From positions 160,955 through 224,954 of IMG/VR virus record IMGVR_UViG_3300006931_000029: 64,000 nt of DNA. The stretch is one strand, 5' to 3'. Of the stretch, positions 12,974 through 58,684 are shown piece after piece. The position numbers were made by a program, and so were the translations under genes. The notes under the pieces are model-generated. The model searched no databases, was not told the DNA's origin, and worked only from the letters and a program-made list of their open reading frames with translations. Each line of letters begins with the position of its first letter. The first letter of the stretch is position 1.

Positions 12974-12988
12974 AGGTTTTGGTAGAAC

Positions 12989-13318
12989 TCAACCTGATTT
13001 TCGACTGGAAATTTCCTTCAGTAAAGACCTGATGATGTCGTGGTACTCTTGCCAGTGAAGCGGCATGGTCGGAGAGTAGTATTCCACGTTGCCTAGTTTC
13101 TTCTCGATTTCAGCGTGACGCTTTGAGAGCGGTAGAGGCGCGAGTATCCAGCGACGATGATGTCCATGGATCGTTGGTTGTTCAACGGCAAGCCCTTTCT
13201 TTACCAGGCGATTCAGTGCAGCCACTTCCCAACTTCGGACGTCTCCACCGGAAATCGGTGACAGCTGCAACAGCTTGTAAACACGAGCCTCAAGCTCGGT
13301 GAGTTTAGGATCGCCCAT
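12989..13318 (-). CDS. Putative winged-helix protein
   Basis: LTELEARVYKLL...ALNRLVKKGLA. Confidence 0.5.
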   Translation of the reverse strand: MGDPKLTELEARVYKLLQLSPISGGDVRSWEVAALNRLVKKGLAVEQPTIHGHHRRWILAPLPLSKRHAEIEKKLGNVEYYSPTMPLHWQEYHDIIRSLLKEISSRKSG

Positions 13319-13363
13319 GAGCAGAAGAATTCGTTTACGTTTTAACAGACTAGTAGGTAGTCT

Positions 13364-13633
13364 ATGAAACCGATCCAACTCGTCGAGGCTCTGCTAGGTG
13401 ACACGCAGCCAGTGATCGTGCAAGATCGTGTGATCCCGAACGGCGACATGGTTTGTCCTCACTGCAAGGAAAGCATCCACGAAAAGGGACTAGCGTACCG
13501 AGATGGTCAACACATCCACGGTGCCTGCGGCGGTACGGTGACTCTTCCTCCACCATCAGCGACCGAGCTGAAGTGGCTCGACCAATTCAAATCACAGGTC
13601 TCGAGTCTGAAGAATCCGCCGGCGAATATCTGA
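13364..13633 (+). CDS. Zn-binding small protein, candidate late/internal virion protein
   Basis: N-terminus MKPIQLVEALL, CPHC...HGAC, and GTAGGTAG directly upstream. Confidence 0.6.
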   Translation: MKPIQLVEALLGDTQPVIVQDRVIPNGDMVCPHCKESIHEKGLAYRDGQHIHGACGGTVTLPPPSATELKWLDQFKSQVSSLKNPPANI

Positions 13634-13787
13634 TTTCGATCCAGAAGCCGATCATCGGCAATGGACAGACATAGAGGCGCTTGGCCTTCTTGTCGTAGTA
13701 GGCGCCAATCCACAGGTCGTACCACCGAAAGAAGGTTTCGACGGTGAGTTCCCAATCGCAGCGATAAGACGAAGGCGTTTGCACGGA

Positions 13788-14168
13788 CTAAACCTCTTCT
13801 TTTCCGTCACGAATCATCTGAGCGCCCGGATACTTCTCCTGCAGCTCCTTGAACTCTTTCGATAGGGTCAAGAGAGCGTCGATCTTTTGGGCTTTGAGCT
13901 GCGCCTCGATTCGATCGGTGATGATGTTGACCAGCTCCTTCAGCGAACTGTGATTTGGATCGTCGAGGTTTCGATTGTCTACTGTGTTGGCGTAATTTTC
14001 CGCCCAGATACCCAAGATTCTGAGGTCCTGAACATTGATGACGATCGTCGCATCATTCTTCGGATCACACGGGATGTCCTTCGTCCCACAAGCCGGACAA
14101 CTCGTTGCTCCTTTCAACTCGTCAGCGGTGAAAGATTTATTGCAACGAATACAACGGGCGGCGTCCAT
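13788..14168 (-). CDS. Zn-ribbon protein
   Basis: CIRC...CPACG. Confidence 0.6.
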   Translation of the reverse strand: MDAARCIRCNKSFTADELKGATSCPACGTKDIPCDPKNDATIVINVQDLRILGIWAENYANTVDNRNLDDPNHSSLKELVNIITDRIEAQLKAQKIDALLTLSKEFKELQEKYPGAQMIRDGKEEV

Positions 14169-14385
14169 GTCCTACTTATCGACGCGAAACGCATTGCGAA
14201 TCTCGTCCCGCTCCTTCGTCCAGTCTTTGCACCAGTCAATGATCGGTTGTCGGGCGGTAGGAACTTCCATTCCAATCATGATAACGAACTCTTGCAGCGC
14301 ATACTCCATGGCGAGAACTCTGGCTTCCCAATGAGTCTGCGGCTCACAGCCAGGCGGTTCCTGGCTGGGAAGGCCTCGGTCTTCG

Positions 14386-14985
14386 TTAATGTCCACCTGA
14401 CGAGAACGCCTTCACCAAGTCCAGATATGGTTGCGACATCTTGTGAGCTGCCGTCCTCGACGCCCAATCGATGGCCGTGTCAAGACTCATGCTCATGTTT
14501 CGAATAGCGTATGCAGCAGCGACAGCCCCGGTCCGGTCTGTACCGTTCAAGCAGTGAACGTAGATTTTCTTCGCGCTCATCTCATTCAGTCGGCTGATGA
14601 AATCGATCAGCCCTTCGAAGTCGTAGGACTGTGCCGAAGGACCGGTGACGTCCGGCGTCGTACCGCCTTCGATCGGCCACCAACAGAGAAGCCTGTTTTG
14701 ATAAGGCATCGCGTGCATCAAAGCAGGGTCCCACTGAGGATCGAGAAACGGCGGAGCACTACGGGTGAACTTGCAGGCGTAGGTGCGCTCGAGAACCTCT
14801 AGCAGGTCAACCTCGCCGGTGTTATCGGTCAGACAGATTTGAATCAAACCGGATTTCTCAGAACCGATCAACGAATCGAGCTGAGCAAAGTCGACTTCTC
14901 GGTCCTTGTTCAGTGGGAAGTTGCCACGCCAAAGATTGCCATGGATTTCGGAGACGCGAGCCGGATCAAGGATGGGATTGTTCAT
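14386..14985 (-). CDS. Cys-based tyrosine/dual-specificity phosphatase
   Basis: YVHCLNGTDRTG is the CX5R P-loop. N-terminal NLWRG. Confidence 0.85.
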   Translation of the reverse strand: MNNPILDPARVSEIHGNLWRGNFPLNKDREVDFAQLDSLIGSEKSGLIQICLTDNTGEVDLLEVLERTYACKFTRSAPPFLDPQWDPALMHAMPYQNRLLCWWPIEGGTTPDVTGPSAQSYDFEGLIDFISRLNEMSAKKIYVHCLNGTDRTGAVAAAYAIRNMSMSLDTAIDWASRTAAHKMSQPYLDLVKAFSSGGH

Positions 14986-15720
14986 GGTTGTGTTCGTTCG
15001 CCTCTGCGCATCTTCATTTCAGCTTCTCGCGACTCCTTGAGAGCATGATAGCTCTCACGGTCAGTCTTGAGATGGTTAAGAAGCCAAGCTTCAGTCATGT
15101 TGCTGGCGAAGATTTCTGCCTCCTCATAGTCAGTGAAAACCCACGGATGGGTCAAGCACCAATGACGTGGATTAAACGTCGCCGTGTATGACTTCGTCAA
15201 CCTCAACCAAACGCCAGATGACACGCGTCGAAATTCAATGATGCTCCCACCTGGATACGGTATTACCCGTGCTTCCAACCGAGGGATAGGAATAGCTGGA
15301 AGCGTGTTGAGCGGTGAGGAGATTCGCCGCTTCCACCAAACTCGAAGTATGCGCAGCCATCTCACTTTTTCTTAAACGCTTCCAGTTCCGGCGGGCCATA
15401 GACGTTGTCGACGGCTGAGTTTGCCGTATACCGAGCGTCGCTCGATCCAGCGCCATTGTCAATCGCCTTGTTGAAGACTGACCACCAGAGAACTGCTCGG
15501 TCGCCGGCAACCACCATAGTCGTGGGAAGCGGAAGCTTCGCCGGTTGCTTTGCGTCCTTGTCCATGTAGACGATGATGTCCGGACCAGGAAAATAGACGT
15601 GAACGTAAGCGTTCACCAGCAGCGTTCCGCAGATGAACAATACCGCAAGGGCGATTGCCACGTCGCGAGGATCGAAATACTGCCACCAGCGTTTGCGTGG
15701 CGGCGGGTTGCTGAGCTGCT

Positions 15721-17775: not shown

Positions 17776-18045
17776 TTAGCTTGATGTTGGGATTGTGGTG
17801 CCGCCGGAAGCGATATAGTCGAGCACGTGACCGTAGGTCTTGAACTTCTCTGCGTGCTCTTCAGGAATTTCGCCACCGATTTGGTCTTTGAACTCCTCCT
17901 CGATCGCCATAAGCAACTCGACCATGTCGAGTGAGTCGCAACCAAGATCGTCAAAGGTGGCAGAACCAACCACCTGGTCGGAGTTCAGGTTCAGCTGATT
18001 GACGAAGATTTCTCGGAGCTTAGTGTCGACTTCTTGGCGTTCCAT
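17776..18045 (-). CDS. acpP: Acyl carrier protein
   Basis: FDDLGCDSLDMVELLMAIEEEF...EIPEEHAEKFKT contains the DSL phosphopantetheine site. ATG at 18045 is preferred over 18207. Confidence 0.9.
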   Translation of the reverse strand: MERQEVDTKLREIFVNQLNLNSDQVVGSATFDDLGCDSLDMVELLMAIEEEFKDQIGGEIPEEHAEKFKTYGHVLDYIASGGTTIPTSS

Positions 18046-18720
18046 AGCGGTTTGAGGTTGGATGAATAAGGCGTGGTGAAAAGCTTTGAGTAGAAGAACT
18101 CGGTCGAAGTTGCTGATAGTTGGATCGATTCCCAGTGGAAGCCTGACGTAGTTCAGCGCAAACAGAAGCCACTCGCGTTCCTCGCGTAGGCGTTGCAGCT
18201 CGTCCATTACGGAAGCCTCTTGGAGAGTTCCTTCCGCTTCGTAGTTTCAAAGTCGTCCGGTTCCGCCTCCACAATCTTGGAAAGCTCTGCAAGATCACCG
18301 AGAATTTGTCGGTATTCTGGAAAGATGAAGCTGATGATTAGCACGCGGAAACTGCCAATCTCTGCAGTGCGAGCAAGGATGATGTTGAGGATGGCCTTCT
18401 TCATCTCCTTGTTGCTCATGTGATCCGCGGAGCGCATGTAGTATTCCAGGAGCTGCGGGACGGTTTGGCGTCTGTCTTTCATTTGCGTGATCCTCCTTCA
18501 ACTGTTGATGTGACTATCTTGCCGCCGAGAACCGTGGCGCCCCAACCTCCGTTGAGAGCGCTAGTCGAGATGATGTAGCCGAGGTAGCCGTCAACTCCGA
18601 AGCAGTAGGAAACCTGTTCACCTCGGTACATGAAGACGCCCTTCGGTCCTCCTGCGGCGTGAACGGCGGTTGGCGCGTCGATCCATTGGGCGTTTGGCGA
18701 CGTCGTGTATTCATGCCGAC

Positions 18721-19347: not shown

Positions 19348-20122
19348 GTCTGCGTAGAACGTAACCTGGATAGGTAAACGATTCCAGACTAAGTTATGTT
19401 TCGCTAATGTCTATCTCAACCTTGACCGTTCCGTCGGCACACTTAACCTCCATCAAACGGATCGTGCGACCTTGAAGAATGAGAATGACGAGAGTGGCAC
19501 GGCGATGGCGGTTAAAATCCCTTTCCCATGAACAGCCAGCCGATTCAACTAAGGCGCTGAGCGCTTCGTGAGCCATCGCCATCTCTTCTTTGGTAAAATC
19601 CAGTGAATCAGCCATCTTGCTCATGACGCAGATAACGTTCGAAACTTCTTCTCGTTTGCCAGTATCAACCGGAGTTTGGCCTGCGTTTCAAGATAGTGCT
19701 TGATGGTTGCAACCGTCCAACCGAAGACAGTCGCCTGTTCCCAGAGAGCCATCAAGATGTGCACGTGCTGGTTTGCATTGTGCACGGACATCCCTGAGCA
19801 GTAAAGGTTTACCTGCCGGAGAAGTTCGTTAGGATGCTCAAAGTAGTTGTCCACCTCACTCGGGTTCTTTGCGCTCTCTTCGTGCATCGTCAGACTTATC
19901 GGTAACTATCGGAGTGACCGCGATTCCATGCATGTCGATTAGCGCCACGCCATCGTCCACCATGAAGGCGTGGTCGTAGCCAGCTGCCTTCAACTTGTTA
20001 GCGATCTCGTCGAAGGCTGGTTTGCTGATCTCAAGTCTGGCGAAGGTGTGAGTGATCCTCAACATAGCGATGGACAGAACTTGGTCTGACGCGCTTGTAA
20101 ACAAAAACTTGTAGACAACGTG

Positions 20123-20593: not shown

Positions 20594-20610
20594 CTGACAG
20601 AGAACGAAAA

Positions 20611-23797: not shown

Positions 23798-24490
23798 CGA
23801 GTCTTTCTTTTCCTGCCGGCGTGATCCAGTAGCCCATGCCGATCTTAGTGGCGTACTTCAAACTTTCCAGATGGACGCACGACTTTGGGTTGAACCTGTA
23901 GGACTTGCGGTTGAGGTTGTGAGCCCGCATGTCCGTCAACGCAAGCAACTGGCGAGTGGTCAATTGAGTGTTCATGGTAGGAGTTTCTCCACTTCATCTA
24001 TCCTACCGGCGTCTACGGCGTCTCGAGGAGAGCAACCTAAGTCAGGATGGACTGTGAACCACCACCTCATCGAAGGAATCCTCTTGCCCAAATCCAACAG
24101 GCGTTGAGCCATACCGTCGTCCATCGGCAGCGTGTTGCTGTTGGTATTCGTAACCACGTTCAGAAGAACTTAACCGCCGACGCCTAGCGGCGCGTTGCTT
24201 GGCACATTTGTCTTCGGCGCAAGCGTCGCAGAGTTTGCCGTGTCCGCCGATTGGCCCATAGTACCGTGCTGGTCGATAGCACCGGGGCTTGGAGCAATAG
24301 ACTTCCGGTTTATCGTGCAAAACTGACAGAACGAAACTGGTATGGGTGGTGGAAGTGGCATGACCAGCATGGATTGGTCGCAGCGACACTGCAGAATCTT
24401 TCCACCATTCAGCAATTTGCGTCCGAAGGGAATCATAAAACACGCACAGCCGATCTAGCTGGTCGACGGGCATTCACCCTCGTTAAGAAC

Positions 24491-25843: not shown

Positions 25844-25854
25844 GTTGGTTAGAA

Positions 25855-26226
25855 CTAACCCTGTGACGGGTCTCCGTCCATGTCCAATATCCGAGTGGGA
25901 CGTGGGAATTCGGTGATGTAGAGATGCCGACCTACTTCCTTCGCCACGATTATCGGTCGTGCACCACCGACCGGATAGATGTCAAGGATATAGGAGCCGA
26001 AGTCCAACCATGAATGCTCCCATAGCTTCGACGGCACGTACCAGCCACGAACCACTGTGCCTTTGCCCGTCCACTCATGGAAAGTCTTCGCTGCGGTGTG
26101 GCAATCAGAGATTCCTTCCAGCATGTTCAACGCTGTCCACGCGTCAGCCAACAGCTCGTCGATCTCGGCCGGCGTACTCGGCAAGTCGCCAGAGACCTGA
26201 GCGTAAGGCGTGAACGTCGGTTTCAT
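25855..26226 (-). CDS. Putative transglutaminase/papain-like fold protein
   Basis: Candidate Cys-His-Asp triad: DCHTAA...EHSWL...ILDI. Confidence 0.45.
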   Translation of the reverse strand: MKPTFTPYAQVSGDLPSTPAEIDELLADAWTALNMLEGISDCHTAAKTFHEWTGKGTVVRGWYVPSKLWEHSWLDFGSYILDIYPVGGARPIIVAKEVGRHLYITEFPRPTRILDMDGDPSQG

Positions 26227-27284: not shown

Positions 27285-27701
27285 GGAGTAAGAATCGGGA
27301 TACGGTCCTTCTTGAACGTAACCCAGGTGATTTGAAGTGTTGGATTGGAGCAGCCCTTCGGTCCCCATTCGCTGGAAACTTTCAGGACTTCGGTGTTGTT
27401 GGCACGGTACTGCCTAACTCGATCGTTGAACACTTCTTCGTCATCTGGTCCGTGAACTTCAACCTCCACTCCATTGACCGTAACGAAGGCGTCAGTGTTG
27501 GTCGGGAAAATCAAGCCGTCTCCACCGAAACCCTGCTCACGCAACCGCTTGCAAACGGCCTGCGCATGGAAGAAATTAGGATGTTTGTCAGTTGAGGAAT
27601 TGTCTTCGTTGCCGAGGCTGACCGTTTCTGGCCACCACGCCTTCGACACGAATTCAACTTGGTATGCTGACATTGTAAACAAGAACTTGCCAGACTCCAG
27701 A

Positions 27702-28753: not shown

Positions 28754-30527
28754 GGTACGAACGCCATCGTGTATGTTGCACCGCCTTCGAAGGTGATGGT
28801 TAACCCGTCCTTGGTCCTCAGTGACGACGTCACCTTCACGCCGTACATCGGCGCCAACTCCAGTACCAGCTTCTCGTTTCGTGCCATCATCTCGGGAATT
28901 GTGACCGGGTCGTCGGCCTTCGTCGCTTCGATGTGGCGGTTGACTGCTTCTCGAAGGGCTGTTACGTTTCTCTTCTGTTCGGCATCCATTAGAGAAATGA
29001 GTTGCGAAGGTACAGCTTGCGAAGCTCCTCTGAGCTGGCAACTTTCACGCACGACGGAGGACACTCAGGCGCACTGAGTCCTGCTCGCATCTGGCGACCC
29101 GCCTTACGCGCCGAGGCACGAAAACCTTTTGGCAGTTTTGGCACCTCAACCGTGACAGGTTTTCCATTACGATGCTTGAGCTTGGTGAGTTTGATTTTCA
29201 TGCCAGTTTAGTGTAGATTTCCACTTCCCATCTGTCGATTGATCCCATCGTGACTCGGATCAGGAGCTCGCCGACCTTCTCCTCCACCGTGTCTCCACGG
29301 CCACCATTCATAGCGTCCGTGTATGCCCTAGAACACGCCGACCGAATGGCCCTGATCATAGGCGCAGTGACAACTAGAGTGTGGTTCTCCAGCCTATTGA
29401 ACACCGCCTCAGCGGCTTTCTGGGATGGCGTGGATTGACTTGCTAGGTCCGGCAAAATGATCTTCATGAACGAATGACCATCCCAAAGTTCCTAAAAATG
29501 TAAACAATTTAGTGCCGCACCTGTCGTTTTCTGGCTGCGCGTATCATCTTGTGGGCGTATCCACGCAGCAAGCACGGGACTTTGCTGCCGATGTCCACGA
29601 TGAAGGTGCCAGTGGTGCCAGAACCAGCCGGATCAACGTGCACCTTCCGAACGACTGGAAACTCAGTGTGCACCAGCTTTAGCTGCACGCTCAACGGCCG
29701 TTGCAATGAGGTCAAGGGTATCCGCTCGCTCATTTTGCCAGACGCCGTTGTGCATCACTCTATTTCTCTCACGGTTAGCCAAAGCCCGAAGCTCAACGGC
29801 GAGCGCTACTCGAGGAGCATCAGCTGGGTTGAAGTGGTCGTTGGCCAAGTCACAGATTTCTTTCTTTATGGGCGTGCGGTCCAACGCCGCCTTGACCATG
29901 TCGATCTCTCTGATATACATCTTGATCAGGCGGAGCGCGTCTGTCAAATCGTTTACGACGTACGCACCAAAGGCTCCTGTCGGCCTAGATAATTTCTTGC
30001 GCAGGTCGTCGTACTCTTGTTGCAACCGTTGACAGATGTCTTTCGCCTCGTCCAACGTGATAGTTTCAGGCGAATAGGTCATAGTCCATTTGCGAGAACG
30101 AATTTGTCGACCACGGCTTGGCTGATCGTCTCCTCGTTCATCTGCTGAAGAATGACTTCCACAATCTTGGACGATAACCCTCGGTCACCGTAAATTTTGC
30201 GATAGCGTACCACGTCTGGCATCTTCGAGATGAGATTGCAAACCGAAGCAGGAACGTTGACGTCCGGATTCCCACTGGCTACGATGGCGAAGCCGTGATT
30301 CAAGTCATTCCTCCATCGGTGGGAGGACGTAGGCATCTCAGGTTTCTTCCGATGGTCAACGATCTTGCCGACCTCAATCACTGCCGCACCCTTCATGTGC
30401 TTGATATTTTCCATGGTCCAACCCGGAGGTGGATTGCCCATGAAGATCGCCTCGACCATTTCGGCGGCGGTGTCCGTAACGTGGGCTTCAACCCCACTCG
30501 GTTTGCTAGCGACGAGGATAAACATGA

Positions 30528-34310: not shown

Positions 34311-36411
34311 GTGGTTACCGCGGCGGTGATTGGTTTGGCCTGAGGGCGCAATGGCCCGATCCAGAAATAATTCTTGAAGTTTTCGTTGCGCACCGAGTTG
34401 GCGTACGGGTAGTGGAAGGCAAGACCGCCGGTAGTTTCCTTGGTGAGTTCACCGACCACCATCTTGCCGGATTCCTTGTGGATGCACCAATAGAAACCGG
34501 GGATCGTCGGACCAGGACCATTGAATGGTTGGGTGGATGCGCCAGACGGTTGACGTCGAAGGAGGTTGGCTGATTCAATCAGCGCCTTGAATTCGGGTGT
34601 GTAGTCCGGACGGATGCCCTCCTGCACGATGGCAGTGAGAAGCAGATCGACAGCCGATTGATAGGCTTCGATCCGATCGATGAGATTGTCGACTCGTGCT
34701 TTGACGTCGTCGGCGATTTCGCGCGGGACTTCCAGGTAGAGAGCTTGAACAGCTTGTCTAACCGGGTTTATGTGGCGGTCTAGGTGTTGCATGACTGGAA
34801 GGCTTGGACAGGAACGATTCGATGGTGCAGCCTGATCCACCGTTGGATCGCTGCAACCGTTGAAACTCACGCCATTTCCGGCGGAACCTGCTGTGGTTCA
34901 CTGGCGTGAGGAGACTGAGTAAGAGTTGTGACGCGTCCTTGTAGACGTAGAAGTCCTTCAATTCTTTGCCGCTGCACGCGTCTTCGATGCGGCTGAGAGA
35001 TTCTTGAATCGGCGTTTTCATTCTGAGATTTCCACCACCGGTTTCCGCTTGACAAAGTCCTCGATCCCGTTGAACATCCGGTTGGATTGCCTCAGGTCGT
35101 CGTCCTTCTTGAACTCCGCAAACAACCGATCGAACCGCATGCGAGCGTAGTCTGGCATGAGCGCTAGAGCCAAGTGCAGGGCCGACATGACTTCGTAGTA
35201 GTCGTTGTGTTCGGGACCCCGGCAGAATGAGCCAACGACTCTTAAGGAGCGCGCGACGGTCCCGGACTTTGGAAGTTTCGGCGTTGTCAGTGGTTGTGGT
35301 TTGCGTTTCGGCATGGAGGGTCTTTGGCGAGTTCACGCGTGATGTCAGTCATGTCTATCCCATTTGGATAGTTCGGGTGTGGTTTGAAACCGGTGGCAAG
35401 GTCGCGTGCTGTGGCTTCCTTCGGACGCTTTAGCATCTTCCTGGAAACCCAGAGCTGAAACAGCAGAGCTAGGATCAACAGAATCGCGTTGAACCACGTC
35501 GCCCATAGCGGTTCACGACGGAAGAATGCGCCGTAAATCGTCATTGCTGCCGACACGAACATGATGGCGTTAGCGATCGACCACGATCTGTGAGCGGGTG
35601 TCATTGTGGTGGATTCGATGTATTGGGCGTGGTTGAATTCCATCGACCAGTTTGACCGGTTTGCACGGTCTTCTTCACCTTCAAATTCGATCTTCCTTTG
35701 AGGAGGATTGCCCACGCCACCCGCCAAAAGACCTTGAACAAACGCCATCTAGCGCTACGAGTTGTAGCGGTGATGCGATAAAGATTGTGCTCTCCGGTGT
35801 CGACGACCATCTCAGTTTGAATAGAATCCATGCACCGCTCGGCGCTCCTGAACGCGTTGTCGACTTCTCGCATGGCTTTGTCCATGTGTCGAGATACGTC
35901 TTTCCAGTCCTGGTTCATGGCAATAGCCCAAGACGGGCCGGCTTGAATGTTGGAACAATTCCCATGTGGCCAAGAACTTGTCCTGGCCAAACGGAAATGT
36001 AAACATCAAACCTGAACGATTGCTACAAATTTTCCGCCACCAAAATCCAAGACCATCTCGTTGTCCGACTCTTGATCGAATTCACTGGCTTGGTCTGAGG
36101 TAATCAGGTAGACGTAGTAAGAACCGACCATCAAGCAGGTCTTGCCTTGGGCATCAACCAGCGGAAATCCACGCGCGATCTCTCCAAGGATGGGTTTCTC
36201 ACCAGACCGGAACTGCGGTGGCACGGCGTTAGTCTTTCGCATGCCCACCAGTAGTTTGCCAACGTTGGCCTGAAGTGTTTCGCGAATCTTTTCGGCGTGA
36301 GCTTTATCTGGCTGAGGTTCCGTTGGTTGGACGTCGGACGGCTTGACGGCTTCGACCGCAGGTTGAGTAGCCTCAATCGGATTTGTTTTGCGTTTTCTGG
36401 CCATGAGATAA

Positions 36412-38470: not shown

Positions 38471-38526
38471 ATTCAAACAACTTAAGGGAAAATGTAAACA
38501 AAAATGTTTACGGACTTGGAGGTTCT
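38471..38526. promoter_or_regulatory. Divergent promoter region with an inverted repeat
   Basis: Minus strand: TTTACA-N16-TTGAAT-N8-ATG(38462). GTAAACA-AAAA-TGTTTAC inverted repeat. Plus strand: GTTCT 7 nt before GTG 38534. Confidence 0.65.
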
Positions 38527-38533: not shown

Positions 38534-38914
38534 GTGCATTTCGTCACCATTTACACTAAGGTTGGCCCGAAGCTATCGAACTGGCTGACGGCGAAAGGTG
38601 TGACCGACGACGAGTGGTTGAAGTGGTGTCTTCGAGACCGAGATTCGAAGGACTTCACCGCAATTGTCGATGAGCTGGAAGAGGCAGCAACAGCTGCCGA
38701 GGTCTTAGTTTCGCCGATCCTTGAGGTGGAACGCTACATCATGGAATCCACGGAGAAAGTCGAACTGCTTATTGAACGCAGAAAGCTGGTATTAACGTCG
38801 AGACCGAAGCACTACGCTAGCTCGGAACTCATTTCGAGATTCATCTCAAAGTGGTTTGAGATTTTGGACAAAGAAGCCGCTAGCGATCTTTCCGCCACAC
38901 GACCCACTTCTTAA
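38534..38914 (+). CDS. Hypothetical protein
   Basis: Plus-strand ORF behind a GTTCT motif. Its 3' end overlaps the sigma-factor gene. Confidence 0.55.
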   Translation: MHFVTIYTKVGPKLSNWLTAKGVTDDEWLKWCLRDRDSKDFTAIVDELEEAATAAEVLVSPILEVERYIMESTEKVELLIERRKLVLTSRPKHYASSELISRFISKWFEILDKEAASDLSATRPTS

Positions 38915-39788
38915 GCTGGTTGATAGCGTCCTGCCGTATCTGACAGATACGCGATTCAGTGACCTTGAACTCCTCAGCTATCTGCCACAGTCGCATGCCC
39001 TCGAAGTAGTTCATCCGCAAGATGGTTTGCCATTGGTCGGGTAACCGGCTGATGTGGGTTTTCAGCAAGCCAACCAGCTCTGCTTCCTGCATTGAGTCTC
39101 TTGCAAGAACGTCCTGGGTGTCTGCCAGAGACTCGTGAAGAGATACGCCGTGTTCCTCACTTTCGCTGATGAAATCGATAGACGTGAACGTTTGAGGACG
39201 GGCTTCTTCGACCATTTTTCTGTACTCGGTTGGCGTCAAGTTCATCTCGGCCATGATCTCGGTCGCCGTCGGGTCTCGTTGCAGTTTTTGCGTCAACGTT
39301 GCGACAACTTCTTTTAGAACCCGGTTTCTAGCTCGAGCTCGACGAGGAACCCAATCCATCCTCCTAAGCTCGTCTAGGATAGCTCCTCGAATTCTCATGG
39401 AAGCGTACCCTTTGAACGAAGAAGCTCTGGCAGCGTCGTACTTCTTCGCTGCCGCCATCAACCCGGTTATTCCTACGCTGTGCAGGTCGTCTGCGTCGAT
39501 GTGTGCAGGAAGATTTAGTTTGATCCGGTCCACGACCTGTCGGACGAGGTACATGTGTTGCACAAGAAAATCTCCGCTAGTTGCCTCCGCGGTTACTTCT
39601 TGCCTCTTCCTCTTAGGTTTAACGATCAGCTCGTGAGGAGCTTGGTTCACCTGCTCCCTAGGAACGACCGGTTGAAAAATGTCAAGGCGGTGCCGAGGCG
39701 CCACCATGATCGGTGGACCGTCGACGACAACTTGAATAATCTCGAAAGCGTCGTCCTCGACTGTGAGTAGGACGAGCGTTGAGTTCAC
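38880..39788 (-). CDS. RNA polymerase sigma factor, FliA/WhiG family
   Basis: DDLHSVGITGL..AAKKYD...FKGYASMRIRGAILDELRRMDWVPR (region 2), region 3, and IAEEFKVTESRICQI (region 4). Confidence 0.9.
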   Translation of the reverse strand: MNSTLVLLTVEDDAFEIIQVVVDGPPIMVAPRHRLDIFQPVVPREQVNQAPHELIVKPKRKRQEVTAEATSGDFLVQHMYLVRQVVDRIKLNLPAHIDADDLHSVGITGLMAAAKKYDAARASSFKGYASMRIRGAILDELRRMDWVPRRARARNRVLKEVVATLTQKLQRDPTATEIMAEMNLTPTEYRKMVEEARPQTFTSIDFISESEEHGVSLHESLADTQDVLARDSMQEAELVGLLKTHISRLPDQWQTILRMNYFEGMRLWQIAEEFKVTESRICQIRQDAINQLKKWVVWRKDR

Positions 39789-41976: not shown

Positions 41977-43526
41977 ACCGGCGCAAGAACAAAAACTAGC
42001 GATCCAGGTTTCAACCCAGACTATGAAGTTTCATCGGATAAATCAAGGATGTTCAACGCTTAACCAATAGGTATGAATGGAACCATTGCTTACCTGATGG
42101 AACTAACGCTACGATGATCTATCGCACTCCCCCTACGTTCGAAAGACTAATTGGCAACGCGCACAGACCCGCTCAAGACTTCTATGAAGCGTGGCGTGCG
42201 AGTTCCAGTATGTCGATCTCCTCGCGGAGACGAAAATACTCCGATGTCCACTCCTTGGAGCCTCTCAACACCCCTATCGAATTGATAGAGCACTGGTGCA
42301 GAGAGCACAATGGGCGGAGATAGGGTTCGACAGTACAACCGTTCGCTCCCATGAACGGTAGGTTAGGGTGATTGGTTGGTTGGAGAGTAATGCCGAAGCG
42401 CGTCTGTGCGTAATCTTTGGCCATCTGGCAATACTCTCGGTCGCAACAACGGTTGGGCCGAATCTCCTCGATGATGTTGCAGTGCGGCGTGCCGCATTTG
42501 GCACAGGTATGATCGGCCATCTTTCGCCATAGAGCGATCAGCTCTGGCGTCTCTTGTCTAAGAGGTTTGAGAATCGGTGTGAGGGATTCGGACGACAATG
42601 CCTGGTCCGACGGCTTGCTGGTCGTCGATCTTGACGCCGATGGAACGGAGGAATTGCCGGTTTTTCTCGGCCTGTGGGAATCTGGTTTTGTGTCCGCTGC
42701 GGAGGGCATAGGTGGTTTCGACCAGCAGGTCAGTAAGGGTTTTTTCGAGCTCGGTCATCATGGCGCTTTCTTGAGAGAATTCTTGACGTCGCGCCGAAAG
42801 CCTTCGCCCTTATCGCACTGGAAGTTGCGACCATTGCCCATGCTGTACGACGTGAGACAAGTCGAGCAGCGGAATGATCCGCCTTTCGTGCCCTTGGCGT
42901 ACGGGATAAACTCCCATGTGTGACCGTTAACGTCGGCTGGTTTTTCGTTAGGAAACATTGGAGAGAGCGGTTCGGAGTGCCTTGGTTACTTCTACGGCAG
43001 AAGGGTACCCGAAAAGGCGTAGTTGATCTCGAACAGCGACAGTTGGTTCGTAAGCCGTTCCGAGAAGTCTTGGACCACCGACTGACATTGGGACTTGAAG
43101 ACCGGAGACGATTGCTCCTAGGTTGGCGATGATCTTTTCCTGCTCTGGTGTGAATTGTTTAGGCATGAGAATGATTGGTCCGCGAGCTGCGATCCGTCCG
43201 CAACCTTCGCAAGGATGAGTCAGGTGTGATTTGCAACCTCGATGGTGGCACGGTTCACCGTCTTTTAGATGAGACCGCATGCTGCTTCAAGTTCGTGGCC
43301 TTCTCGAACTGAGCGCTCGTGCAGCGCTGTTTCGTCTTTCGTGGCTGGACGCATTTTATCGAAGTCGAACAACTTGCTGCCGGCCGGTTGGACTACGACG
43401 CCGGGAACCCCATCTAGGCGAAACGTTTCGATTCCCAGCGCCATCAAAACGTTGTCGACTCCGACCACGTCAACCAACGACATCAGGCGTTCTTCTTCGG
43501 TCGGGATGTATCGTTCCATGACGGCC

Positions 43527-45227: not shown

Positions 45228-45293
45228 ATTCAACCCACTTTATTTGAAAATGTAAACAAAAAAGTGTACGGCTCCGCTACTTTATTTTTTACA
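45228..45293 (-). promoter_or_regulatory. Early promoter cassette with an inverted repeat
   Basis: TTTACA-N17-TTGAAT-N6-ATG(45221). 45251-45265 and 45279-45293 form a 13/15 inverted repeat. Confidence 0.75.
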
Positions 45294-47685: not shown

Positions 47686-49217
47686 TTATGGCTTATGCCC
47701 AAAAGACACCCCTGTCGATCAAGTTGTCGATGTCGACTCCATGGGAGTAACCCTTCTGACTAATCCAGCAACGATGGCGCGCGTCTTCTGTAGGAAATCC
47801 CCATGGCCATTCGTTCGCGATCGACGTGAGCGTAATCAACTCCTGATCCTGTCCGTAAAGGCGGTGAAGAGTGTAGCACCACATCACGGCGTCGCCCGGC
47901 CCTTTGCAGAGATTTAACACGTAAAAGAAAACCTCAATGGTCAACTGCGTAGACTCGTGCATTCTACCTGCGAAGACTTTGAAACCAAAGCCTTCAGAGA
48001 CTTTAGCAATGACGGAGGCGTGACGATTGTTCGCTAGATTAGTACGATCAAACGGCGTCAACTTGCCTTCTTTTTCATCTTCGCTCTCGGCGGCCAAAAG
48101 CTGCAGAAACATCAAGCTCTGGTCCGGGGTCATCGGCTCGATGTCCTCCTTAGCTCGAAAGTCGAGCAACGATTTCAAGACGATCTTCTCGCCTGTTTTC
48201 GGACTGATAGTGATGTCTGGTTTGTCGCTCATTTGATGTTGAGAAGTTTCTTGGCTGCTGCTTCGACCTGAGGATCAAGCCAGTCCTTTTTAGAAGGAAG
48301 ATCGGAGATGATCTGGCGCAAAAGGCTCTCCGCTAGATTCTCACCGTTCAAGGGTTGACGACCGACCACGGCGTTGTTTAGAATCGTTGTTGCGTCGAGA
48401 GCCGTTGAATCCATCGCCATTTGAAGCTGCTCAAAGCTTCCGCAGTCCTTACGAGCGTCAAAGTTATCGGGCAAGATGGCGATCGCCTGCACCTCGATGT
48501 AGGTCTTTCCCTTGAGCGGGCCTTTAGTGACGTGACCGCGGTAATTTACCCGGTCCCATGTCCATCTAATTATTGCCGGAAGATTGGCGGGCTTTTCTGG
48601 AAGATCGATTCTCTTCGACGACATAGTAGGCAGCGGTTGAAGCCAGGACTTGGCCAGTTGTGAGAAGGAAAGCTAGAAGGAGTTTGAACCAGACGCTAAT
48701 CGACTGACCGAATGGTAACATCAACGTCAGGATGTAGACCGCGCCTACGTTGAACAGAAAGGCGAAGGCGGTGAGCGTGGTTGAGATAGGGGGCGACTTC
48801 AAGGTTTGGTTTTCTTCCGATGATCGTAGACGATGTGCTTCTGTTCTTCGGCATGCATGCGAGGAGCGAAGACGTGGCACTTCCCATCGTCTAGCAAGAA
48901 CTCACGGTGGATCGTGTCGGCAGGAAGATTGGCGTCAGGCTTGGACATTTCAACAACGGCTGTTTCTGGTTTTTGAACCAATTCGCCTTTCCACATTCTT
49001 CCGCTTACCTTGGGAACGACCGGAGCTTCGTCTCGCTGTTGTCGTTTGCCGGCTTTCGAGACATAGGTCTTGAGCAGGATTTCCAAACTACCTGCTTTCT
49101 CGATACGACCTCGAATGTACTCAGGATCGGAATAAACGACCTCGTCTCCAGTGACTGAACACTTCAGCGTGAGAGGGCAGGGAAAGCCAAGAGTCGGGTT
49201 GATCGGGTTGATGCCGC

Positions 49218-49496: not shown

Positions 49497-50000
49497 CTAG
49501 CGCTTTGCGGTCCCAACTCCATCGTTTTTCTCGATGATGTCTAGGAACGCAAATGTTTTTCCTGAGTACGCGTAGCCCAGCAAGATCGATTCAAACTCCT
49601 GGTCTGTGATCCACGAAAAACCCTGCTCCTTCACATACTCAATTGCGCCGTCGGGATTGAAACGCACCAGTCGTTGATTGACGAGCCGAGCTTCAGATGG
49701 AATCTTCACCACGATTGGTAGTGTCACGACGCTCGCGACTCGCACGAACGGAGACGTGCGGTGCCAACCAGGGTGTTGAACCGTCACAGACCCGTCGCTC
49801 GAGTCGTACGCCAACCCAACGTGGTTGAGCGAAATATGGTTCAAGCAGAGAATGTAGAAAAGTGGAGCGCCGAAAACCAGGATTACGGCTAAAGCGATGA
49901 GAGACCAACGAAGTATAGAGCGCATAGTACTGCCAGGAGAACGATAAATCTCCTCCAGCGCCGGGTCATACCCGAGTTTTGCTGAAGGAGATTTGCTCAT
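49497..50000 (-). CDS. Membrane-anchored SPFH-like protein
   Basis: TM helix followed by HVGLAYD...PGWHRTSPF. Confidence 0.45.
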   Translation of the reverse strand: MSKSPSAKLGYDPALEEIYRSPGSTMRSILRWSLIALAVILVFGAPLFYILCLNHISLNHVGLAYDSSDGSVTVQHPGWHRTSPFVRVASVVTLPIVVKIPSEARLVNQRLVRFNPDGAIEYVKEQGFSWITDQEFESILLGYAYSGKTFAFLDIIEKNDGVGTAKR

Positions 50001-50137: not shown

Positions 50138-51469
50138 TTACGTTAATGAGCCAACAGCGACGGTTTCTTTGTCGTCAGCCGTTGGCCCGAAAGAGAGAAG
50201 ACGCGGAACAATTCCGGTGGTGGCTTTGATCTCTGTCAATAACCAGTCAATGGTTCCTACGTCTTTGTAGACCGGTTTTGCGTTCTCAAGAGCTTGTGTA
50301 ACTTTGGCCCGTGCAAACAAATCCCGAGAACTAGAATGATCGAGACGCATGGTAGACCTATCCGGCAATCTGTACTCTGAGCAGACCTTCAGTTCGCCAA
50401 GTGAACTTACCCGATCCAAGCATGTCACGGCTAGGTAGTCCATCTTGCCGGCGACGTCGCACGCGTACTTCAATGCCACAGTGTCGAGCCAACCAGCCCT
50501 CATGCCACCTTGCCATCGGTTGTGGACGTTGTGCTGCTCTGGAAGTCTGCGCGTCATATCCTCGTCATAAGCAACAAAGGGACCCGCGCCATGTCTCGTG
50601 CTGTAGGCTCGCGTTACGCCGATCTTGGTAACCTCTCCGCCATAGCCGATCTCGTCCAACATTTCGTCGGCGTTGGCGAACGTCGTTGTGCTCCACGTGG
50701 TATGAGGATGAAAACCGTACCACTCGTCTAACAACACGCCTTGAGCGCCTTCGAAGACGATTGGTCTGTCTTGGTTGGCGATGTCTCTCCACGTGTTGCG
50801 CGGCACGATATGAACCTCTTGGACGAAACTTTGATAAATTCCTAGAAAGAAGTCGATGACTGATCCGTCAACGAAGCAATCCTCAAACTCCTGCATCGCG
50901 TCTGGATGAAACGACGCGCCATCGAGCATCCTCTTCAACTTGGCGCATTTGTGCTCTCTCAAGAGCTTTAGTTTCTGTCTGACGAGGTCTGGATAGAATA
51001 AATCTCCAGCTCGGATAACGAACTGAGGATTCAACATGACGTCCTCCATCGTCTCGCCGATGCCGATGCCGCACGTTCCGTGGGCTCCGTCACCGCGGTG
51101 CAGCTCAATGATTCGGTTCGCCGCTTGTTGAAAAGGGCTGATGATAGGCGCCTCGTGATCTATGAAAGTGCGAGCCATCGGCTTCGACACGCCAAGCGTC
51201 TCGAGATGCGCGGCTTCCTTCATCATAGCCTTTGGAGCGATCAGCACGTGTTTCGACAGGAACGTGGTGGTATCGTCCACGAACATGCCGCTGCCGAACT
51301 GAGAAAATTTGTGGCTTCGTCCATCACTTGTGACGACGTGGTGGGCCGCCTGAGCGCCACCGTTAAACCGGACCACAGTTCCAGCGCCCACCTTGCGGAC
51401 AAGGTAATCGACGGTCGTTCCTTTGCCTTGGTCTCCATATCCAAGGTCGACGACGATGTAGGCTTTCAT
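50138..51469 (-). CDS. Divergent adenylosuccinate synthetase-like (PurA-fold) ligase
   Basis: GDQGKG, RFNGGAQAAH, FEGAQG.LLD, AYSTRHGAGPF, GWLD. The aspartate-binding loop is replaced. Confidence 0.9.
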   Translation of the reverse strand: MKAYIVVDLGYGDQGKGTTVDYLVRKVGAGTVVRFNGGAQAAHHVVTSDGRSHKFSQFGSGMFVDDTTTFLSKHVLIAPKAMMKEAAHLETLGVSKPMARTFIDHEAPIISPFQQAANRIIELHRGDGAHGTCGIGIGETMEDVMLNPQFVIRAGDLFYPDLVRQKLKLLREHKCAKLKRMLDGASFHPDAMQEFEDCFVDGSVIDFFLGIYQSFVQEVHIVPRNTWRDIANQDRPIVFEGAQGVLLDEWYGFHPHTTWSTTTFANADEMLDEIGYGGEVTKIGVTRAYSTRHGAGPFVAYDEDMTRRLPEQHNVHNRWQGGMRAGWLDTVALKYACDVAGKMDYLAVTCLDRVSSLGELKVCSEYRLPDRSTMRLDHSSSRDLFARAKVTQALENAKPVYKDVGTIDWLLTEIKATTGIVPRLLSFGPTADDKETVAVGSLT

Positions 51470-55967: not shown

Positions 55968-56369
55968 TGTAGTCAAGAACTAGTCAGACCCCAGGATTCG
56001 TTATCTTGGGCGGCGTGATTTCGTTCAATTTGTTGAGAATTTTCCTGATAGCCAGTTGAATGCCCATTCCACGCTGGGCTTTGTCGAGTTCGAGAAACTG
56101 AGATTGCTCAGCTATCTTGGCCAGCGTGTCTAACTCTCGCCACGTGAGCTGGTTTTCGTTGTCCGGAAAAACACTGGACGCATTCACTATTCCGTAGAGA
56201 AATCCTCCAACTTGAGACGCGCGTTGACACACGCCGTCATAGTGTTTCTGCGAGCACTCAACTAGCAACTCAATCTCGTCAGGAGAAAAGGTAACCCACG
56301 CTTTTGGTTGAAAAGTGACAGACAAGAGATTCATTTCGGTGCAGGCCTCCTAGTCGGAGGGCTGTAGCG

Positions 56370-56401: not shown

Positions 56402-56411
56402 CCATGGCTGT

Positions 56412-57335: not shown

Positions 57336-57388
57336 ATTGATTCGAGTTTTTAACGTTTAACAGACTTGATTTGCTTTCAACGAAAGTA

Positions 57389-57425
57389 AGCCTAAACTTT
57401 CTTTCAGCAATGTAAACAAAAAAGT
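57389..57425 (-). promoter_or_regulatory. Sigma70-like early promoter
   Basis: TTTACA-N16-TAGGCT, followed by a leader of about 50 nt. Confidence 0.7.
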
Positions 57426-57606
57426 GCGAACTATTTTTCGGTATGTTCTTGGCTAGATTGGATTTCCCTGATTTCCGTGTCGTGGGTAAAATCAGCTCTA
57501 GCACAGGCCAGAAGCAACTTTACGATCATGAGAAGCACCAGACAGATGGCGAATAGGCCGAGAAAGTTGATGAACCTCTGTTCGCTAGGCGAGTATTCTC
57601 CGGGGC

Positions 57607-58128
57607 TCATGTTTCGTATGGAGCAATGCCGCCAGTGGTGTAGTAGCCGTTGACGTTGAGCATCATTCCTGATTTTGACTTTCTCGGTGTCGGCGTACGA
57701 CCAACGCTGAAGAGGAACTCGGCCACGAGTTGGCGACTGGACATTTCCTCGATGTCTGGATCACGGCGACCCATCAACACGGAAGCCACAGTGCAGAAAG
57801 CAGTGGCTTCATCATTGAAAGCAATTCCATCGCCTGAGCGATTAAAATTCTTCGCGTCAAATTTGAAACCGGAGGCTTCGAGGCGGTAGAGCGAATTGAG
57901 AAACCCGGTTGCCGACATGTCTTTGAGCTCGTTGAGCATCTTGACAAATTCCTCAGCGGCGTCGTTGCCCAATTCGGCGACAATTCCATCGTACACCATC
58001 TTGATGTGCTTCGGGCCAAGATCGCCACGGTTAACGCCGCGACCCGAGTAATACTCTGGACGAGCGGACAAGCGACCATCCGTGTGTTTGTGGATGATCG
58101 CGCGAACGGACATTTTTTCAGTTGACAT
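57607..58128 (-). CDS. Hypothetical protein
   Basis: 173-aa ORF tiling the array. Confidence 0.65.
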   Translation of the reverse strand: MSTEKMSVRAIIHKHTDGRLSARPEYYSGRGVNRGDLGPKHIKMVYDGIVAELGNDAAEEFVKMLNELKDMSATGFLNSLYRLEASGFKFDAKNFNRSGDGIAFNDEATAFCTVASVLMGRRDPDIEEMSSRQLVAEFLFSVGRTPTPRKSKSGMMLNVNGYYTTGGIAPYET

Positions 58129-58130
58129 GG

Positions 58131-58586
58131 TTAAACTCTAGTTGCGCATTCGGGTCCGAGACCCAGTTCGATACTCTCTGGAACAGTGAGCTTACGCCCA
58201 CAACGGCCGCAGCGACCCTCGTGCCACAATTCGCAGTTCGGAAGCTCCTGACCTGCGAGAACTCGCTCGACTACCCACCTAGCTGCCTTAGCGGATGGCG
58301 CGTCCGGCGTAATCTTCGATCGGACGCCGTGCGAGTAAGTCCCATTGGCGAAAATCGTGCCGACAAACTGGTATGAATGCTCGTTGTCCGAACCGTTAAG
58401 GACTGAGACGAAGTGCGGCGATTGAGCGGTCGGTTTGCGAACCTTCAGCGTGAATCGCGTCTGGGTTTTACCTGACCGGACCGTGAAAGTAGCGTTACCA
58501 GCGAGCAGAAACTGCTTTAAGTTTGCCGGAGCAACTTGAGCAGGAGCAGCGGGGTCCAGTCCAGGTAGGGAAGGAGTGTCAACCAT
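58131..58586 (-). CDS. DUF6011 domain protein
   Basis: LAGNATFT, HEGRCGRCGRKLTVPESIELGLGPECA. Confidence 0.85.
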   Translation of the reverse strand: MVDTPSLPGLDPAAPAQVAPANLKQFLLAGNATFTVRSGKTQTRFTLKVRKPTAQSPHFVSVLNGSDNEHSYQFVGTIFANGTYSHGVRSKITPDAPSAKAARWVVERVLAGQELPNCELWHEGRCGRCGRKLTVPESIELGLGPECATRV

Positions 58587-58593
58587 AAAAACC

Positions 58594-58632
58594 ATTCAAC
58601 CCACTTTGTTCTGAAATGTAAACAAAAAAGTG
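58594..58632 (-). promoter_or_regulatory. Early promoter cassette
   Basis: TTTACA-N17-TTGAAT-N7-ATG(58586). Confidence 0.75.
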
Positions 58633-58684
58633 TAGGTAATTTTAGGTGTCTTTCGGCTCAGCTGGAAGTAGGTTCTTCTAGACT

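What the first reader, a model, noticed from the sequence alone, without database searches (positions are those of the whole stretch)
12984..58676. Second promoter-like element: GTTCT 7-12 nt before start codons
Seen: GTTCT precedes starts at 12973 (10 nt), 19347 (8), 20065 (10), 20593 (7), 24157 (7), 24473 (12), 25843 (7), 27673 (8), 35965 (7), 41976 (9), 55967 (8), and on the plus strand 38534 (7) and 58685 (8). It also precedes both candidate RNAs and the ACP leader. It tends to sit in short gaps where genes are not translationally coupled, has no fixed -35 partner and is not SD-like. Roughly one such placement would be expected by chance. Inference: a middle-class promoter read by a phage sigma factor or activator. 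The FliA-like sigma at 38880-39788 is a candidate, although the canonical sigma28 -10 (GCCGATAA) differs.
Basis: partly seen in the sequence, partly recalled or inferred. Interest (0 to 1): 0.6.

Follow-up and report, generated by a model that had tools for sequence, protein, structure and literature searches.

The report
Phage GTTCT promoter box beside start codons

Summary
All 13 listed sites check out. Genome-wide (224,954 bp, complete phage), GTTCT ranks first of 1024 five-mers for lying 6-13 nt before an ORF-opening ATG/GTG (38 of 479 copies, p=5e-17). The spacer mode is 7-8 nt. None of its 15 one-mismatch variants is enriched, and there is no -35 partner.

Three related 223-238 kb phage genomes show the same signal, as do orthologous genes whose flanks cannot be aligned.

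This clade has no Shine-Dalgarno signal. Its sigma70-type promoters (TGTTTACA, 17 nt, -10 hexamer) stand about 6 nt from the ATG, so they should give leaderless mRNAs. GTTCT(t) occupies the same place as that -10 hexamer.

Genes behind GTTCT include primase, DnaB-like helicase, SbcC-like nuclease, flap endonuclease, ligase and a kinase, which reads as a "middle" class.

The promoter reading is therefore the best one (about 0.6), but no start site is mapped because no RNA data exist.

The FliA/WhiG sigma in the window is genuine. However, it is absent from five relatives, three of which demonstrably keep the motif (the other two were not tested), and no sigma28-type promoters exist here.

A conserved, very divergent sigma-like protein outside the window is a better but unproven candidate reader.

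The parts
141..145 (-). GTTCT, 12 nt before TTG at 128 (228-aa ORF); low confidence
12984..12988 (-). GTTCT, 10 nt before ATG 12973
14403..14407 (-). GTTCT, 6 nt before GTG 14396
19356..19360 (-). GTTCT, 8 nt before ATG 19347 (208-aa ORF)
20076..20080 (-). GTTCT, 10 nt before ATG 20065. It lies inside a T-tract/TGTTTACA promoter, 15 nt after TTTACA
20601..20605 (-). GTTCT, 7 nt before GTG 20593 (NADAR-domain protein)
24165..24169 (-). GTTCT, 7 nt before GTG 24157. The 61-aa ORF overlaps the 24473 ORF, so this gene is uncertain
24486..24490 (-). GTTCT, 12 nt before ATG 24473 (143-aa ORF)
25851..25855 (-). GTTCT, 7 nt before ATG 25843 (153-aa ORF)
27682..27686 (-). GTTCT, 8 nt before ATG 27673
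30095..30099 (-).
35973..35977 (-). GTTCT, 7 nt before ATG 35965. It lies 20 nt after the TTTACA of a TGTTTACA promoter
38522..38526 (+). GTTCT, 7 nt before GTG 38534. This is a divergent plus-strand gene; an alternative ATG lies at 38504
41986..41990 (-). GTTCT, 9 nt before TTG 41976, or 30 nt before ATG 41955 (methyltransferase)
48897..48901 (-). GTTCT, 9 nt before ATG 48887 (63-aa ORF); possible site
49938..49942 (-).
55976..55980 (-). GTTCT, 8 nt before ATG 55967 (DUF2786/DUF7168 protein)
58672..58676 (+). GTTCT, 8 nt before ATG 58685. This is a divergent plus-strand gene, back to back with a minus-strand TGTTTACA promoter
38880..39788 (-). It is a genuine sigma but is not conserved in relatives that keep the motif

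Best explanation
GTTCT, often GTTCTt, is the -10-like core of a promoter class specific to this phage clade. It has no -35 element.

RNA polymerase carrying a specificity factor other than the host primary sigma would melt DNA at this box and start about 7 nt downstream. That point is at, or a few bases before, the start codon. The resulting mRNAs are leaderless or nearly so, and the host can translate them without a Shine-Dalgarno sequence.

The class mainly serves DNA replication, recombination and nucleotide-metabolism genes, so it is 'middle'-like. It is sometimes superimposed on early sigma70-type promoters.

What is shown: the positional enrichment, the strictness of the word, its conservation in relatives, its geometry relative to bona fide promoters, and the gene classes it precedes.

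What is inferred: that it acts on DNA as a promoter, where transcription starts, and when it is active.

The best candidate is a clade-conserved, highly divergent sigma-like protein at genome 98776-99792, minus strand, outside the window.
For: 1. Strict word with strong positional enrichment: p=1.6e-15 with gene calls and 4.7e-17 without; no one-mismatch variant enriched.

2. Same result in three related genomes: rank 1 in G002 and G004, rank 6 in G003, spacer mode 7-8 in each. Pooled over 116 sites, spacer 7 occurs 34 times and spacer 8 occurs 24 times.

3. Orthologues of two genes in many IMG/VR loci (30-58% amino-acid identity, GC 47-60%) keep GTTCT 7-11 nt before the start, while their flanks cannot be aligned.

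4. Leaderless architecture of the clade:
- In G000, TTTACA ends 27-32 nt before start codons, with a peak at 29-30.
- In G003, the promoters are TGTTTACA, N17, TGaTATAGT, N6, ATG, and 10 of 17 have a spacer of exactly 6.
- GTTCTn therefore falls exactly at the -10 hexamer position.
- The same geometry (a -10 box 6-7 bp before the ORF) has been shown experimentally to drive leaderless genes in Deinococcus (PMC12340547).

5. No SD signal exists in this clade, whereas the same test recovers AGGAG in distant phages.

6. The motif is enriched at genes that need their own promoter: 12/52 divergent genes against 4/95 coupled genes. There are back-to-back pairs in 27-78 bp divergent gaps.

7. GTTCT directly abuts an intrinsic terminator T-tract in G002 and L029.

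8. Where GTTCT lies inside TGTTTACA promoters, its position follows the ATG rather than the -35. It would not be in the RNA made from that promoter.

9. The genes behind it are primase, DnaB-like helicase, SbcC-like nuclease, flap endonuclease, LigA, a dTMP-kinase-like protein, glycosyltransferases and Cpn10. No recognised structural gene is among them.
Against: No transcription start is mapped, because only DNA runs hold this phage.

Five bases (10 bits) occur 479 times in the genome, and about 440 copies are not near starts. Extra determinants, or tolerated spurious starts, must therefore be assumed.

About 30% of sites have spacers of 10-12 nt, which would leave leaders of 3-5 nt.

About a quarter of the start codons behind the motif are GTG or TTG, which are poor leaderless starts in some bacteria.

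Avoidance of the motif on the antisense strand of genes is not distinguishable from background.

Placement before RNA genes is not significant: only the tmRNA (14 nt) and one Rfam-only tRNA (10 nt) show it.

Conservation at orthologous genes is only moderate (odds ratio about 3, p=0.05).

No reader protein has been demonstrated.
Confidence: 0.6

Rival explanations
1. GUUCU acts in the RNA. It would be a non-SD translation-initiation or standby element, or the recognition site of a sequence-specific endoribonuclease or RNA-binding regulator (in the manner of RegB, RegA or MazF). Such a factor would release or control downstream cistrons, for example by generating leaderless mRNAs from polycistronic transcripts.
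For: The spacing to the start codon (mode 7-8, range 6-13) resembles SD spacing.

The strict five-base requirement with no tolerated mismatch resembles nuclease or RNA-binding-protein specificity more than it resembles typical -10 boxes.

The low information content is unproblematic for a signal that works only together with a nearby start codon.

The motif is frequent in short same-strand gaps (9/35).

The clade has no SD, so another signal would be welcome.
Against: In promoters of the TGTTTACA class, the motif lies upstream of the predicted start site and would not be transcribed from that promoter.

Divergent gaps as short as 27-40 bp carry GTTCT and no other recognisable promoter, so an upstream start site would have to lie inside the neighbouring gene.

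Some sites directly follow terminators.

GUUCU is not complementary to the anti-SD CCUCC.

Sense-strand copies inside genes are not avoided (193 observed, 184-186 expected). They are followed by ATG/GTG at 6-13 nt as often as control words are (47/188 against 20%).
Confidence: 0.18
2. GTTCT is a half-site or operator for a phage DNA-binding regulator. The regulator would sit over the -10/+1 region and switch on or off promoters whose own elements are too weak to see.
For: Several palindromic arrangements exist: AGAAC-N2-GTTCT at genome 154045-154063, GTTCT-N3-AGAAC at window 11502-11514, and GTTCT-N11-AGAAC at genome 15718-15738.

Six early TGTTTACA promoters contain GTTCT between the -35 and the ATG, against about 1 expected. 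This would suit shut-off of early promoters.
Against: Most sites are single and asymmetric, and they are strand-specific with respect to the gene.

The pooled 116 sites show no underlying -35 or -10 signal around the motif, so there is no visible promoter for a regulator to act on.

The palindromes coincide with divergent gene pairs, where two oppositely oriented single sites are expected anyway.
Confidence: 0.1
3. One reading: GTTCT promoters are read by the FliA/WhiG-type sigma encoded at window 38880-39788.
For: The gene is a full-length FliA/WhiG sigma with regions 2, 3 and 4. It is the only Sigma70_r2 gene in the genome.
Against: It is absent from five related genomes, as is any Sigma70_r2 domain. 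Three of these genomes (G002, G003, G004) have the same GTTCT signal.

GTTCT has no likeness to the sigma28 -10 (GCCGATAA), and no TAAA-N15-GCCGATAA sites exist in the genome.

Region 4 is present, yet there is no -35 partner.
Confidence: 0.05

Closest known systems
-10 boxes adjacent to ORFs that drive leaderless mRNAs (TANNNT 6-7 bp before the ORF in Deinococcus-Thermus; also Actinobacteria). Source: PMC12340547, PMC3160421
   Same: A single short box stands 6-8 nt before the start codon. There is no SD and often no -35. The position mimics an RBS, but in those organisms the box has been shown to act as a -10.
   Different: The sequence is GTTCT rather than TANNNT: position -11 is T, not A. 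It is found in a phage clade alongside ordinary TTTACA-N17-TATAGT promoters. It presumably needs a different specificity factor. No start site is mapped.
T4 late promoters (TATAAATA, read by the divergent sigma gp55 with gp33 and the gp45 clamp). From established knowledge
   Same: The phage has T4-like structural genes. The element is one short, strictly conserved -10-region word without a -35. A very divergent phage sigma-like protein is available as a candidate reader.
   Different: The word is different. The genes served are replication and recombination genes, not late structural genes. The box is placed for leaderless mRNAs. Homology of the candidate protein to gp55 is weak (E about 1e-4, and only for orthologues). 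Clamp dependence is unknown.
T4 middle promoters (MotA box at -30 plus a sigma70 -10, with MotA/AsiA sigma appropriation). From established knowledge
   Same: The gene class served is the same: primase, helicase, gp46-like nuclease, RNase H/FEN and ligase.
   Different: The conserved element here lies at -10, not at -30. No sigma70-type -10 accompanies it.
ECF sigma promoters (-35 GGAAC-type with a short -10 such as GTT or CGTC). From established knowledge
   Same: The -10 is short and G/T/C-rich. The candidate sigma-like protein's N-terminal domain best matches ECF sigma2 domains (SigC, SigW, SigK; Z 9.2-9.8, rmsd 2.4-3.2 A).
   Different: ECF promoters depend on a strong -35, and none is present here.
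Shine-Dalgarno ribosome-binding site
   Same: The distance to the start codon is similar, and both favour genes that are not translationally coupled.
   Different: There is no complementarity to CCUCC. The clade lacks any SD signal, while the same test finds AGGAG in distant phages.

Membership tests
sigma70-type -10 hexamer (TATAAT / TAnnnT) | A at -11 and T at -7 within a hexamer placed about 6 nt before the start site | tested here: not met
   When aligned to the TATAGT-N6-ATG promoters of relative G003, GTTCTn has T at -11. T at -7 occurs in only 45% of the 116 sites. The position is met; the sequence is not.
sigma28 / FliA-WhiG promoter | TAAA-N15-GCCGATAA consensus | tested here: not met
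   There are 0 matches to TAAA-N14-16-nCGATA. There are 18 CCGATAW sites in the genome, and only 2 lie within 150 nt of a start.
sigma28 / FliA-WhiG promoter | Co-occurrence of the sigma gene with the motif | tested here: not met
   The sigma gene and Sigma70_r2 domain are absent from G001-G005. GTTCT is enriched in G002-G004.
Shine-Dalgarno site | Complementarity to the 16S 3' end (CCUCC), located 5-10 nt before the start | tested here: not met
   The spacing is compatible, but the sequence is not complementary. No GGAGG-type word is enriched in G000 or its close relatives, whereas AGGAG ranks first in distant phages.
Leaderless-mRNA promoter architecture | Promoter elements at a fixed distance from the start codon, so that the start site coincides with it | tested here: met
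   The distance from TTTACA to the start codon is 27-32 nt. G003 has TTTACA-N17-TATAGT-N6-ATG. GTTCT has a spacer mode of 7-8. This is geometry only.
Leaderless-mRNA promoter architecture | Mapped primary 5' ends at or next to the start codon | not testable with these tools
   No RNA run holds this phage.
T4 late promoter system | TATAAATA box | tested here: not met
   The motif is GTTCT. No TATAAATA-like word is enriched.
T4 late promoter system | gp55-type sigma encoded by the phage | tested here: inconclusive
   phrog_234 hits the orthologues in G004 and G005 at E=1.9e-4 and 8.4e-5, but not the G000 copy. hhalign to T4 gp55 is not significant. The AF2 model of the G000 protein (pLDDT 76) matches sigma factors almost exclusively, and its sigma2 domain gives Z 9.2-9.8.

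The most novel reading that the evidence does not exclude
A clade of uncultured T4-like soil phages of about 200-240 kb runs its replication (middle) genes from a -10-only promoter whose core is the invariant word GTTCT.

In this reading, the promoter is read by a phage-encoded, extremely divergent sigma with an ECF-like sigma2 domain (genome 98776-99792). It produces leaderless mRNAs in a host that does not use Shine-Dalgarno pairing.

This would be a complete transcription-translation strategy not described for any cultured phage.
Probability: 0.3. Interest if true: 0.7.

Novelty: new variant of a known kind. Interest (0 to 1): 0.55.

Why it matters
If confirmed, GTTCT gives a simple, portable marker for one temporal gene class in a large uncultured clade of soil phages.

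It also corrects gene starts in these genomes, because many true starts lie 7-8 nt after the box.

It shows a phage that relies on leaderless expression without SD pairing for much of its early and replication-gene programme.

It further points to a new, very divergent sigma-like protein with a five-base -10 specificity. That would interest people who study sigma-DNA recognition and people who build orthogonal promoters.

Finally, it warns that motifs at 'RBS distance' in SD-less genomes are often promoters.

Tried and rejected
- **RNA evidence.** The look-up of sequencing runs returned only DNA metagenome runs from rhizosphere and soil, so start sites cannot be mapped.

- **Close annotated relatives.** None were found by DNA search. 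The best cultured-phage capsid match is about 31% identical.

- **Host identification.**
  - The genome-contig scan with LigA returned one irrelevant Sulfurimonas hit.
  - The protein atlas places the FliA-like sigma nearest to Verrucomicrobiota and Bdellovibrionota clusters, which is only a lead.

- **Synonymous-codon shuffling for strand-specific avoidance.**
  - Antisense copies look depleted (157 observed against 211-212 expected).
  - The null distribution over all five-mers has an sd of 3.7 z-units, and AGAAC is only rank 153 from the bottom.
  - The result is inconclusive.

- **Placement before RNA genes.** Only the tmRNA (14 nt) and one Rfam-only tRNA (10 nt) follow a GTTCT. This is not significant.

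- **Terminator adjacency.** Only 3 of 116 sites show it, so it is anecdotal.

- **Candidate sigma-like protein.**
  - The profile search of the PDB and hhalign against T4 gp55 gave no significant sequence match.
  - No paralogue of this protein was found.

- **Crude test without the 'start of ORF' filter.** It was too noisy on 20-kb loci.

They could not be located. Rfam found nothing in the window at gathering thresholds.


Full report
**Context.** The window is the last 64 kb of a complete 224,954-bp virus record with direct terminal repeats.
- The phage has T4-like portal, capsid and prohead-protease genes, a family-A DNA polymerase and an NAD-dependent ligase.
- It also carries about 38 tRNAs and a tmRNA.
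- It has no DNA-level relatives among deposited phages. Its capsid protein is at most about 31% identical to any cultured phage.
- Seventy-nine related IMG/VR loci were found, with capsid identity of 64-82% for the close clade and contigs up to 238 kb.
- The DNA occurs in rhizosphere and soil metagenomes. No RNA run holds it.

- Every one of the 13 listed sites has GTTCT at the stated place and distance.
- No gene caller was available, so I built one from codon-phase Markov scores, without any RBS model. It called 283 genes.
- GTTCT is the most enriched five-mer in the 22 nt before starts: 25 against 5.3 expected.
- Its distance to the start peaks sharply at 7-8 nt, with a tail to 12.
- At spacer 6-12 there are 22 sites against 2.1 expected (p=1.6e-15). 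None of the 15 one-mismatch variants exceeds expectation.
- A test without gene calls counts a word followed 6-13 nt later by an ATG/GTG that opens an ORF of at least 60 codons with at most 20 open codons upstream. It ranks GTTCT first of 1024 (38/479, p=4.7e-17).
- In the window alone this test gives 12 sites against 2.1 expected (p=2e-6).
- Total GTTCT is not in excess: 131 in the window against 156 in shuffles. The signal is therefore positional.
- The flanks carry no information. There is no -35 partner, only a T preference after the motif (45% of 116 pooled sites).
- The motif prefers uncoupled genes:
  - divergent neighbours: 12/52
  - same-strand gap of 10-39 nt: 9/35
  - same-strand gap of 40 nt or more: 8/100
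  - same-strand gap under 10 nt: 4/95

**Conservation.**
- Orthologues of two motif-bearing genes keep GTTCT 7-11 nt before their start in many relatives with 30-58% protein identity and GC of 47-60%. The genes are a glycosyltransferase-like gene (genome 94496-95524) and an SbcC-like gene (genome 79146-81107). The surrounding bases cannot be aligned.
- I fetched three near-complete relatives: G002 (238 kb), G003 (223 kb) and G004 (230 kb).
- GTTCT is again rank 1, rank 6 and rank 1 respectively, with the same spacer profile.
- Distant phages with capsid identity of 35% or less show AGGAG/GGAGG on top and no GTTCT. This validates the test and shows that the close clade lacks Shine-Dalgarno signals altogether.
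- Conservation of the motif gene by gene is only moderate: 7/26 against 16/149, an odds ratio of about 3, p=0.05. That is expected if promoters move when gene order changes.

**What the position means.** The other promoter-like element of this genome is a T-tract followed by TGTTTACA.
- In G000 it ends 27-32 nt before start codons, with a peak at 29-30. Several further copies are followed by unannotated ATGs at 28-30 nt.
- In G003 the same element is a textbook sigma70 promoter: TTTACA, 17 nt, TGaTATAGT, then exactly 6 nt to the ATG in 10 of 17 cases.
- A -35 box has no reason to keep a fixed distance to a start codon unless transcription starts there. These promoters therefore predict leaderless mRNAs.
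- This is the arrangement shown experimentally for TANNNT boxes 6-7 bp before ORFs in Deinococcus (PMC12340547).
- GTTCT with spacer 7-8, read as the hexamer GTTCTn with spacer 6-7, occupies the place of the -10 hexamer.
- Six TGTTTACA promoters also contain GTTCT. There it keeps its distance to the ATG and not to the -35. It would lie upstream of that promoter's start site, so it would not be in that RNA.
- Pairs of GTTCT face outward in divergent gaps of 27-78 bp that contain no other recognisable promoter.
- In G002 and L029 the box directly follows a canonical terminator hairpin and T-tract, and the ATG comes 7-8 nt later.

Together these points favour a DNA-level, -10-like promoter element.

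**Which genes.** Proteins encoded behind GTTCT include:
- a primase (phrog_47)
- a DnaB-like helicase
- an SbcC-like nuclease subunit (phrog_77)
- a 5'-3' exonuclease (FEN)
- LigA
- a thymidylate-kinase-like protein
- glycosyl- and methyltransferases
- a histidine phosphatase
- a NADAR protein
- a Cpn10-like protein

In relatives, two helicases and the sigma-like gene also follow GTTCT. None of the recognised structural genes does. The capsid gene instead has a long CA-rich leader in the whole clade. This fits a replication ('middle') class, but the timing is inferred.

**Who reads it.**
- The gene at window 38880-39788 is a genuine FliA/WhiG sigma: TIGR02479 at 211.6 bits against a cut-off of 189.6, with best PDB matches to FliA and sigma28.
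- It is the only Sigma70_r2 gene in the genome.
- It is missing from five related genomes, four of them at least 93% complete, both as a protein and as a domain. G002-G004 keep the motif.
- No sigma28-type promoters exist in the genome.
- The motif also has no -35 element for region 4 to contact.
- This candidate is therefore not supported.

A better candidate lies outside the window at genome 98776-99792, minus strand, 338 aa.
- It is present once in each of the four genomes and in 21 related loci.
- Its orthologues hit the T4 gp55 late-sigma family weakly, at E about 1e-4.
- It contains a region-2-like sequence pattern.
- Its AlphaFold model (pLDDT 76) matches sigma factors almost exclusively.
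- Residues 16-125 superpose on ECF sigma2 domains: SigC 'Pribnow box recognition region' at Z 9.8 and rmsd 2.4 A over 88 residues, SigW at Z 9.7, and SigK at Z 9.2.
- The domain is helical and the scores are moderate, so I call it sigma-like with caution.
- In G000 it lies downstream of an early TTTACA-N17-TAAAAT promoter. It could therefore be made early.
- Nothing links it specifically to GTTCT rather than to another promoter class.

**Rivals.**
- *RNA-level signal* (non-SD initiation element, or a nuclease or RNA-binding-protein site).
  - It fits the SD-like spacing and the unusual strictness of the word.
  - It fits poorly with the sites that lie upstream of predicted start sites, the promoter-less divergent gaps, and the terminator-abutting sites.
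  - Sense copies inside genes are not avoided.
- *Operator for a DNA-binding regulator.*
  - It is suggested by a few palindromic arrangements and by the excess of GTTCT inside early promoters.
  - Most sites are single, and no underlying promoter is visible around them.
- *Unresolved tests.* The strand-avoidance test and the RNA-gene test did not discriminate.

**Verdict.**
- The promoter interpretation is the best-supported reading, at about 0.6.
- The 'middle' label is plausible.
- The link to the FliA-like sigma is not supported.
- The finding is a new variant of a known kind: a phage-specific, -10-only promoter class in a leaderless, SD-free expression system.

Noticed in passing
genome-wide; examples in window upstream of the ATGs at 41955 and 59728 and the GTG at 8805: A second start-proximal word family, TA(A/T/C/G)(T/G/A)TAG(G/T), for example TAATTAGG, TACTTAGG and TAGGTAGG, ends only 2-6 nt before many start codons, including in divergent gaps. 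That is too close for a standard -10 box. Related words (GTAGT, CGTAG, TAGTT) are enriched in the relatives. Its function is unexplained.
   Followed up: partly
window, e.g. 57411-57418(-), 58617-58624(-), 45251-45258(-), 6244-6251(-); whole genome: T-tract plus TGTTTACA promoters stand at a fixed 27-32 nt from start codons, which predicts leaderless early mRNAs. Relative G003 has the textbook form TTTACA-N17-TGaTATAGT-N6-ATG.
   Followed up: yes
genome 98776-99792(-) = L005:18776-19792 (outside window): A clade-conserved 338-aa protein not recognised by Pfam or PHROGs. Its model matches sigma factors, with an ECF-like sigma2 domain at Z 9.2-9.8. Orthologues hit the T4 gp55 family weakly.
   Followed up: partly
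genome 54200-62900(-) = L003:14203-L004:2830 (outside window): An array of about 38 tRNA genes plus a tmRNA with tag GNTIVKAFARSNELRLAA, which from memory resembles cyanobacterial-type tags. A TROVE/Ro60-like plus VWA protein (genome 52566-54047) lies next to the array.
   Followed up: no
L007:12581-12656(+) (genome 132581-132656): A tRNA with anticodon CUA, an amber-suppressor type that ARAGORN calls 'Pyl'. Possible TAG recoding was not examined.
   Followed up: no
window 50138-51469(-): An adenylosuccinate-synthetase homologue of 443 aa scores below the PurA equivalog cut-offs and has a weak match to PurZ (E=1.8e-10). Whether the phage modifies its adenine was not examined.
   Followed up: no
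whole genome, coding strands: GGAGG is among the most avoided five-mers inside genes (147 observed against 271 expected under synonymous shuffling), although no SD is used upstream of genes.
   Followed up: no
L010-L076, upstream of the capsid gene; G000 genome about 91745: The capsid gene probably starts 33 nt upstream of my call, at ATGGTCATC... It is preceded across the clade by a 30-45 nt CA-rich leader without an SD.
   Followed up: partly
window 17776-18207(-): Acyl-carrier-protein gene (PP-binding domain at 17812-18021). The ACP domain starts at ATG 18045. The ORF extends 54 codons upstream to ATG 18207. GTTCT at 18095-18099 lies inside that extension.
   Followed up: partly
window 60254-64000(+): A very large open-ended ORF (more than 1248 aa) with PA14 and PKD domains at the genome end, probably a fibre or adhesin.
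   Followed up: no
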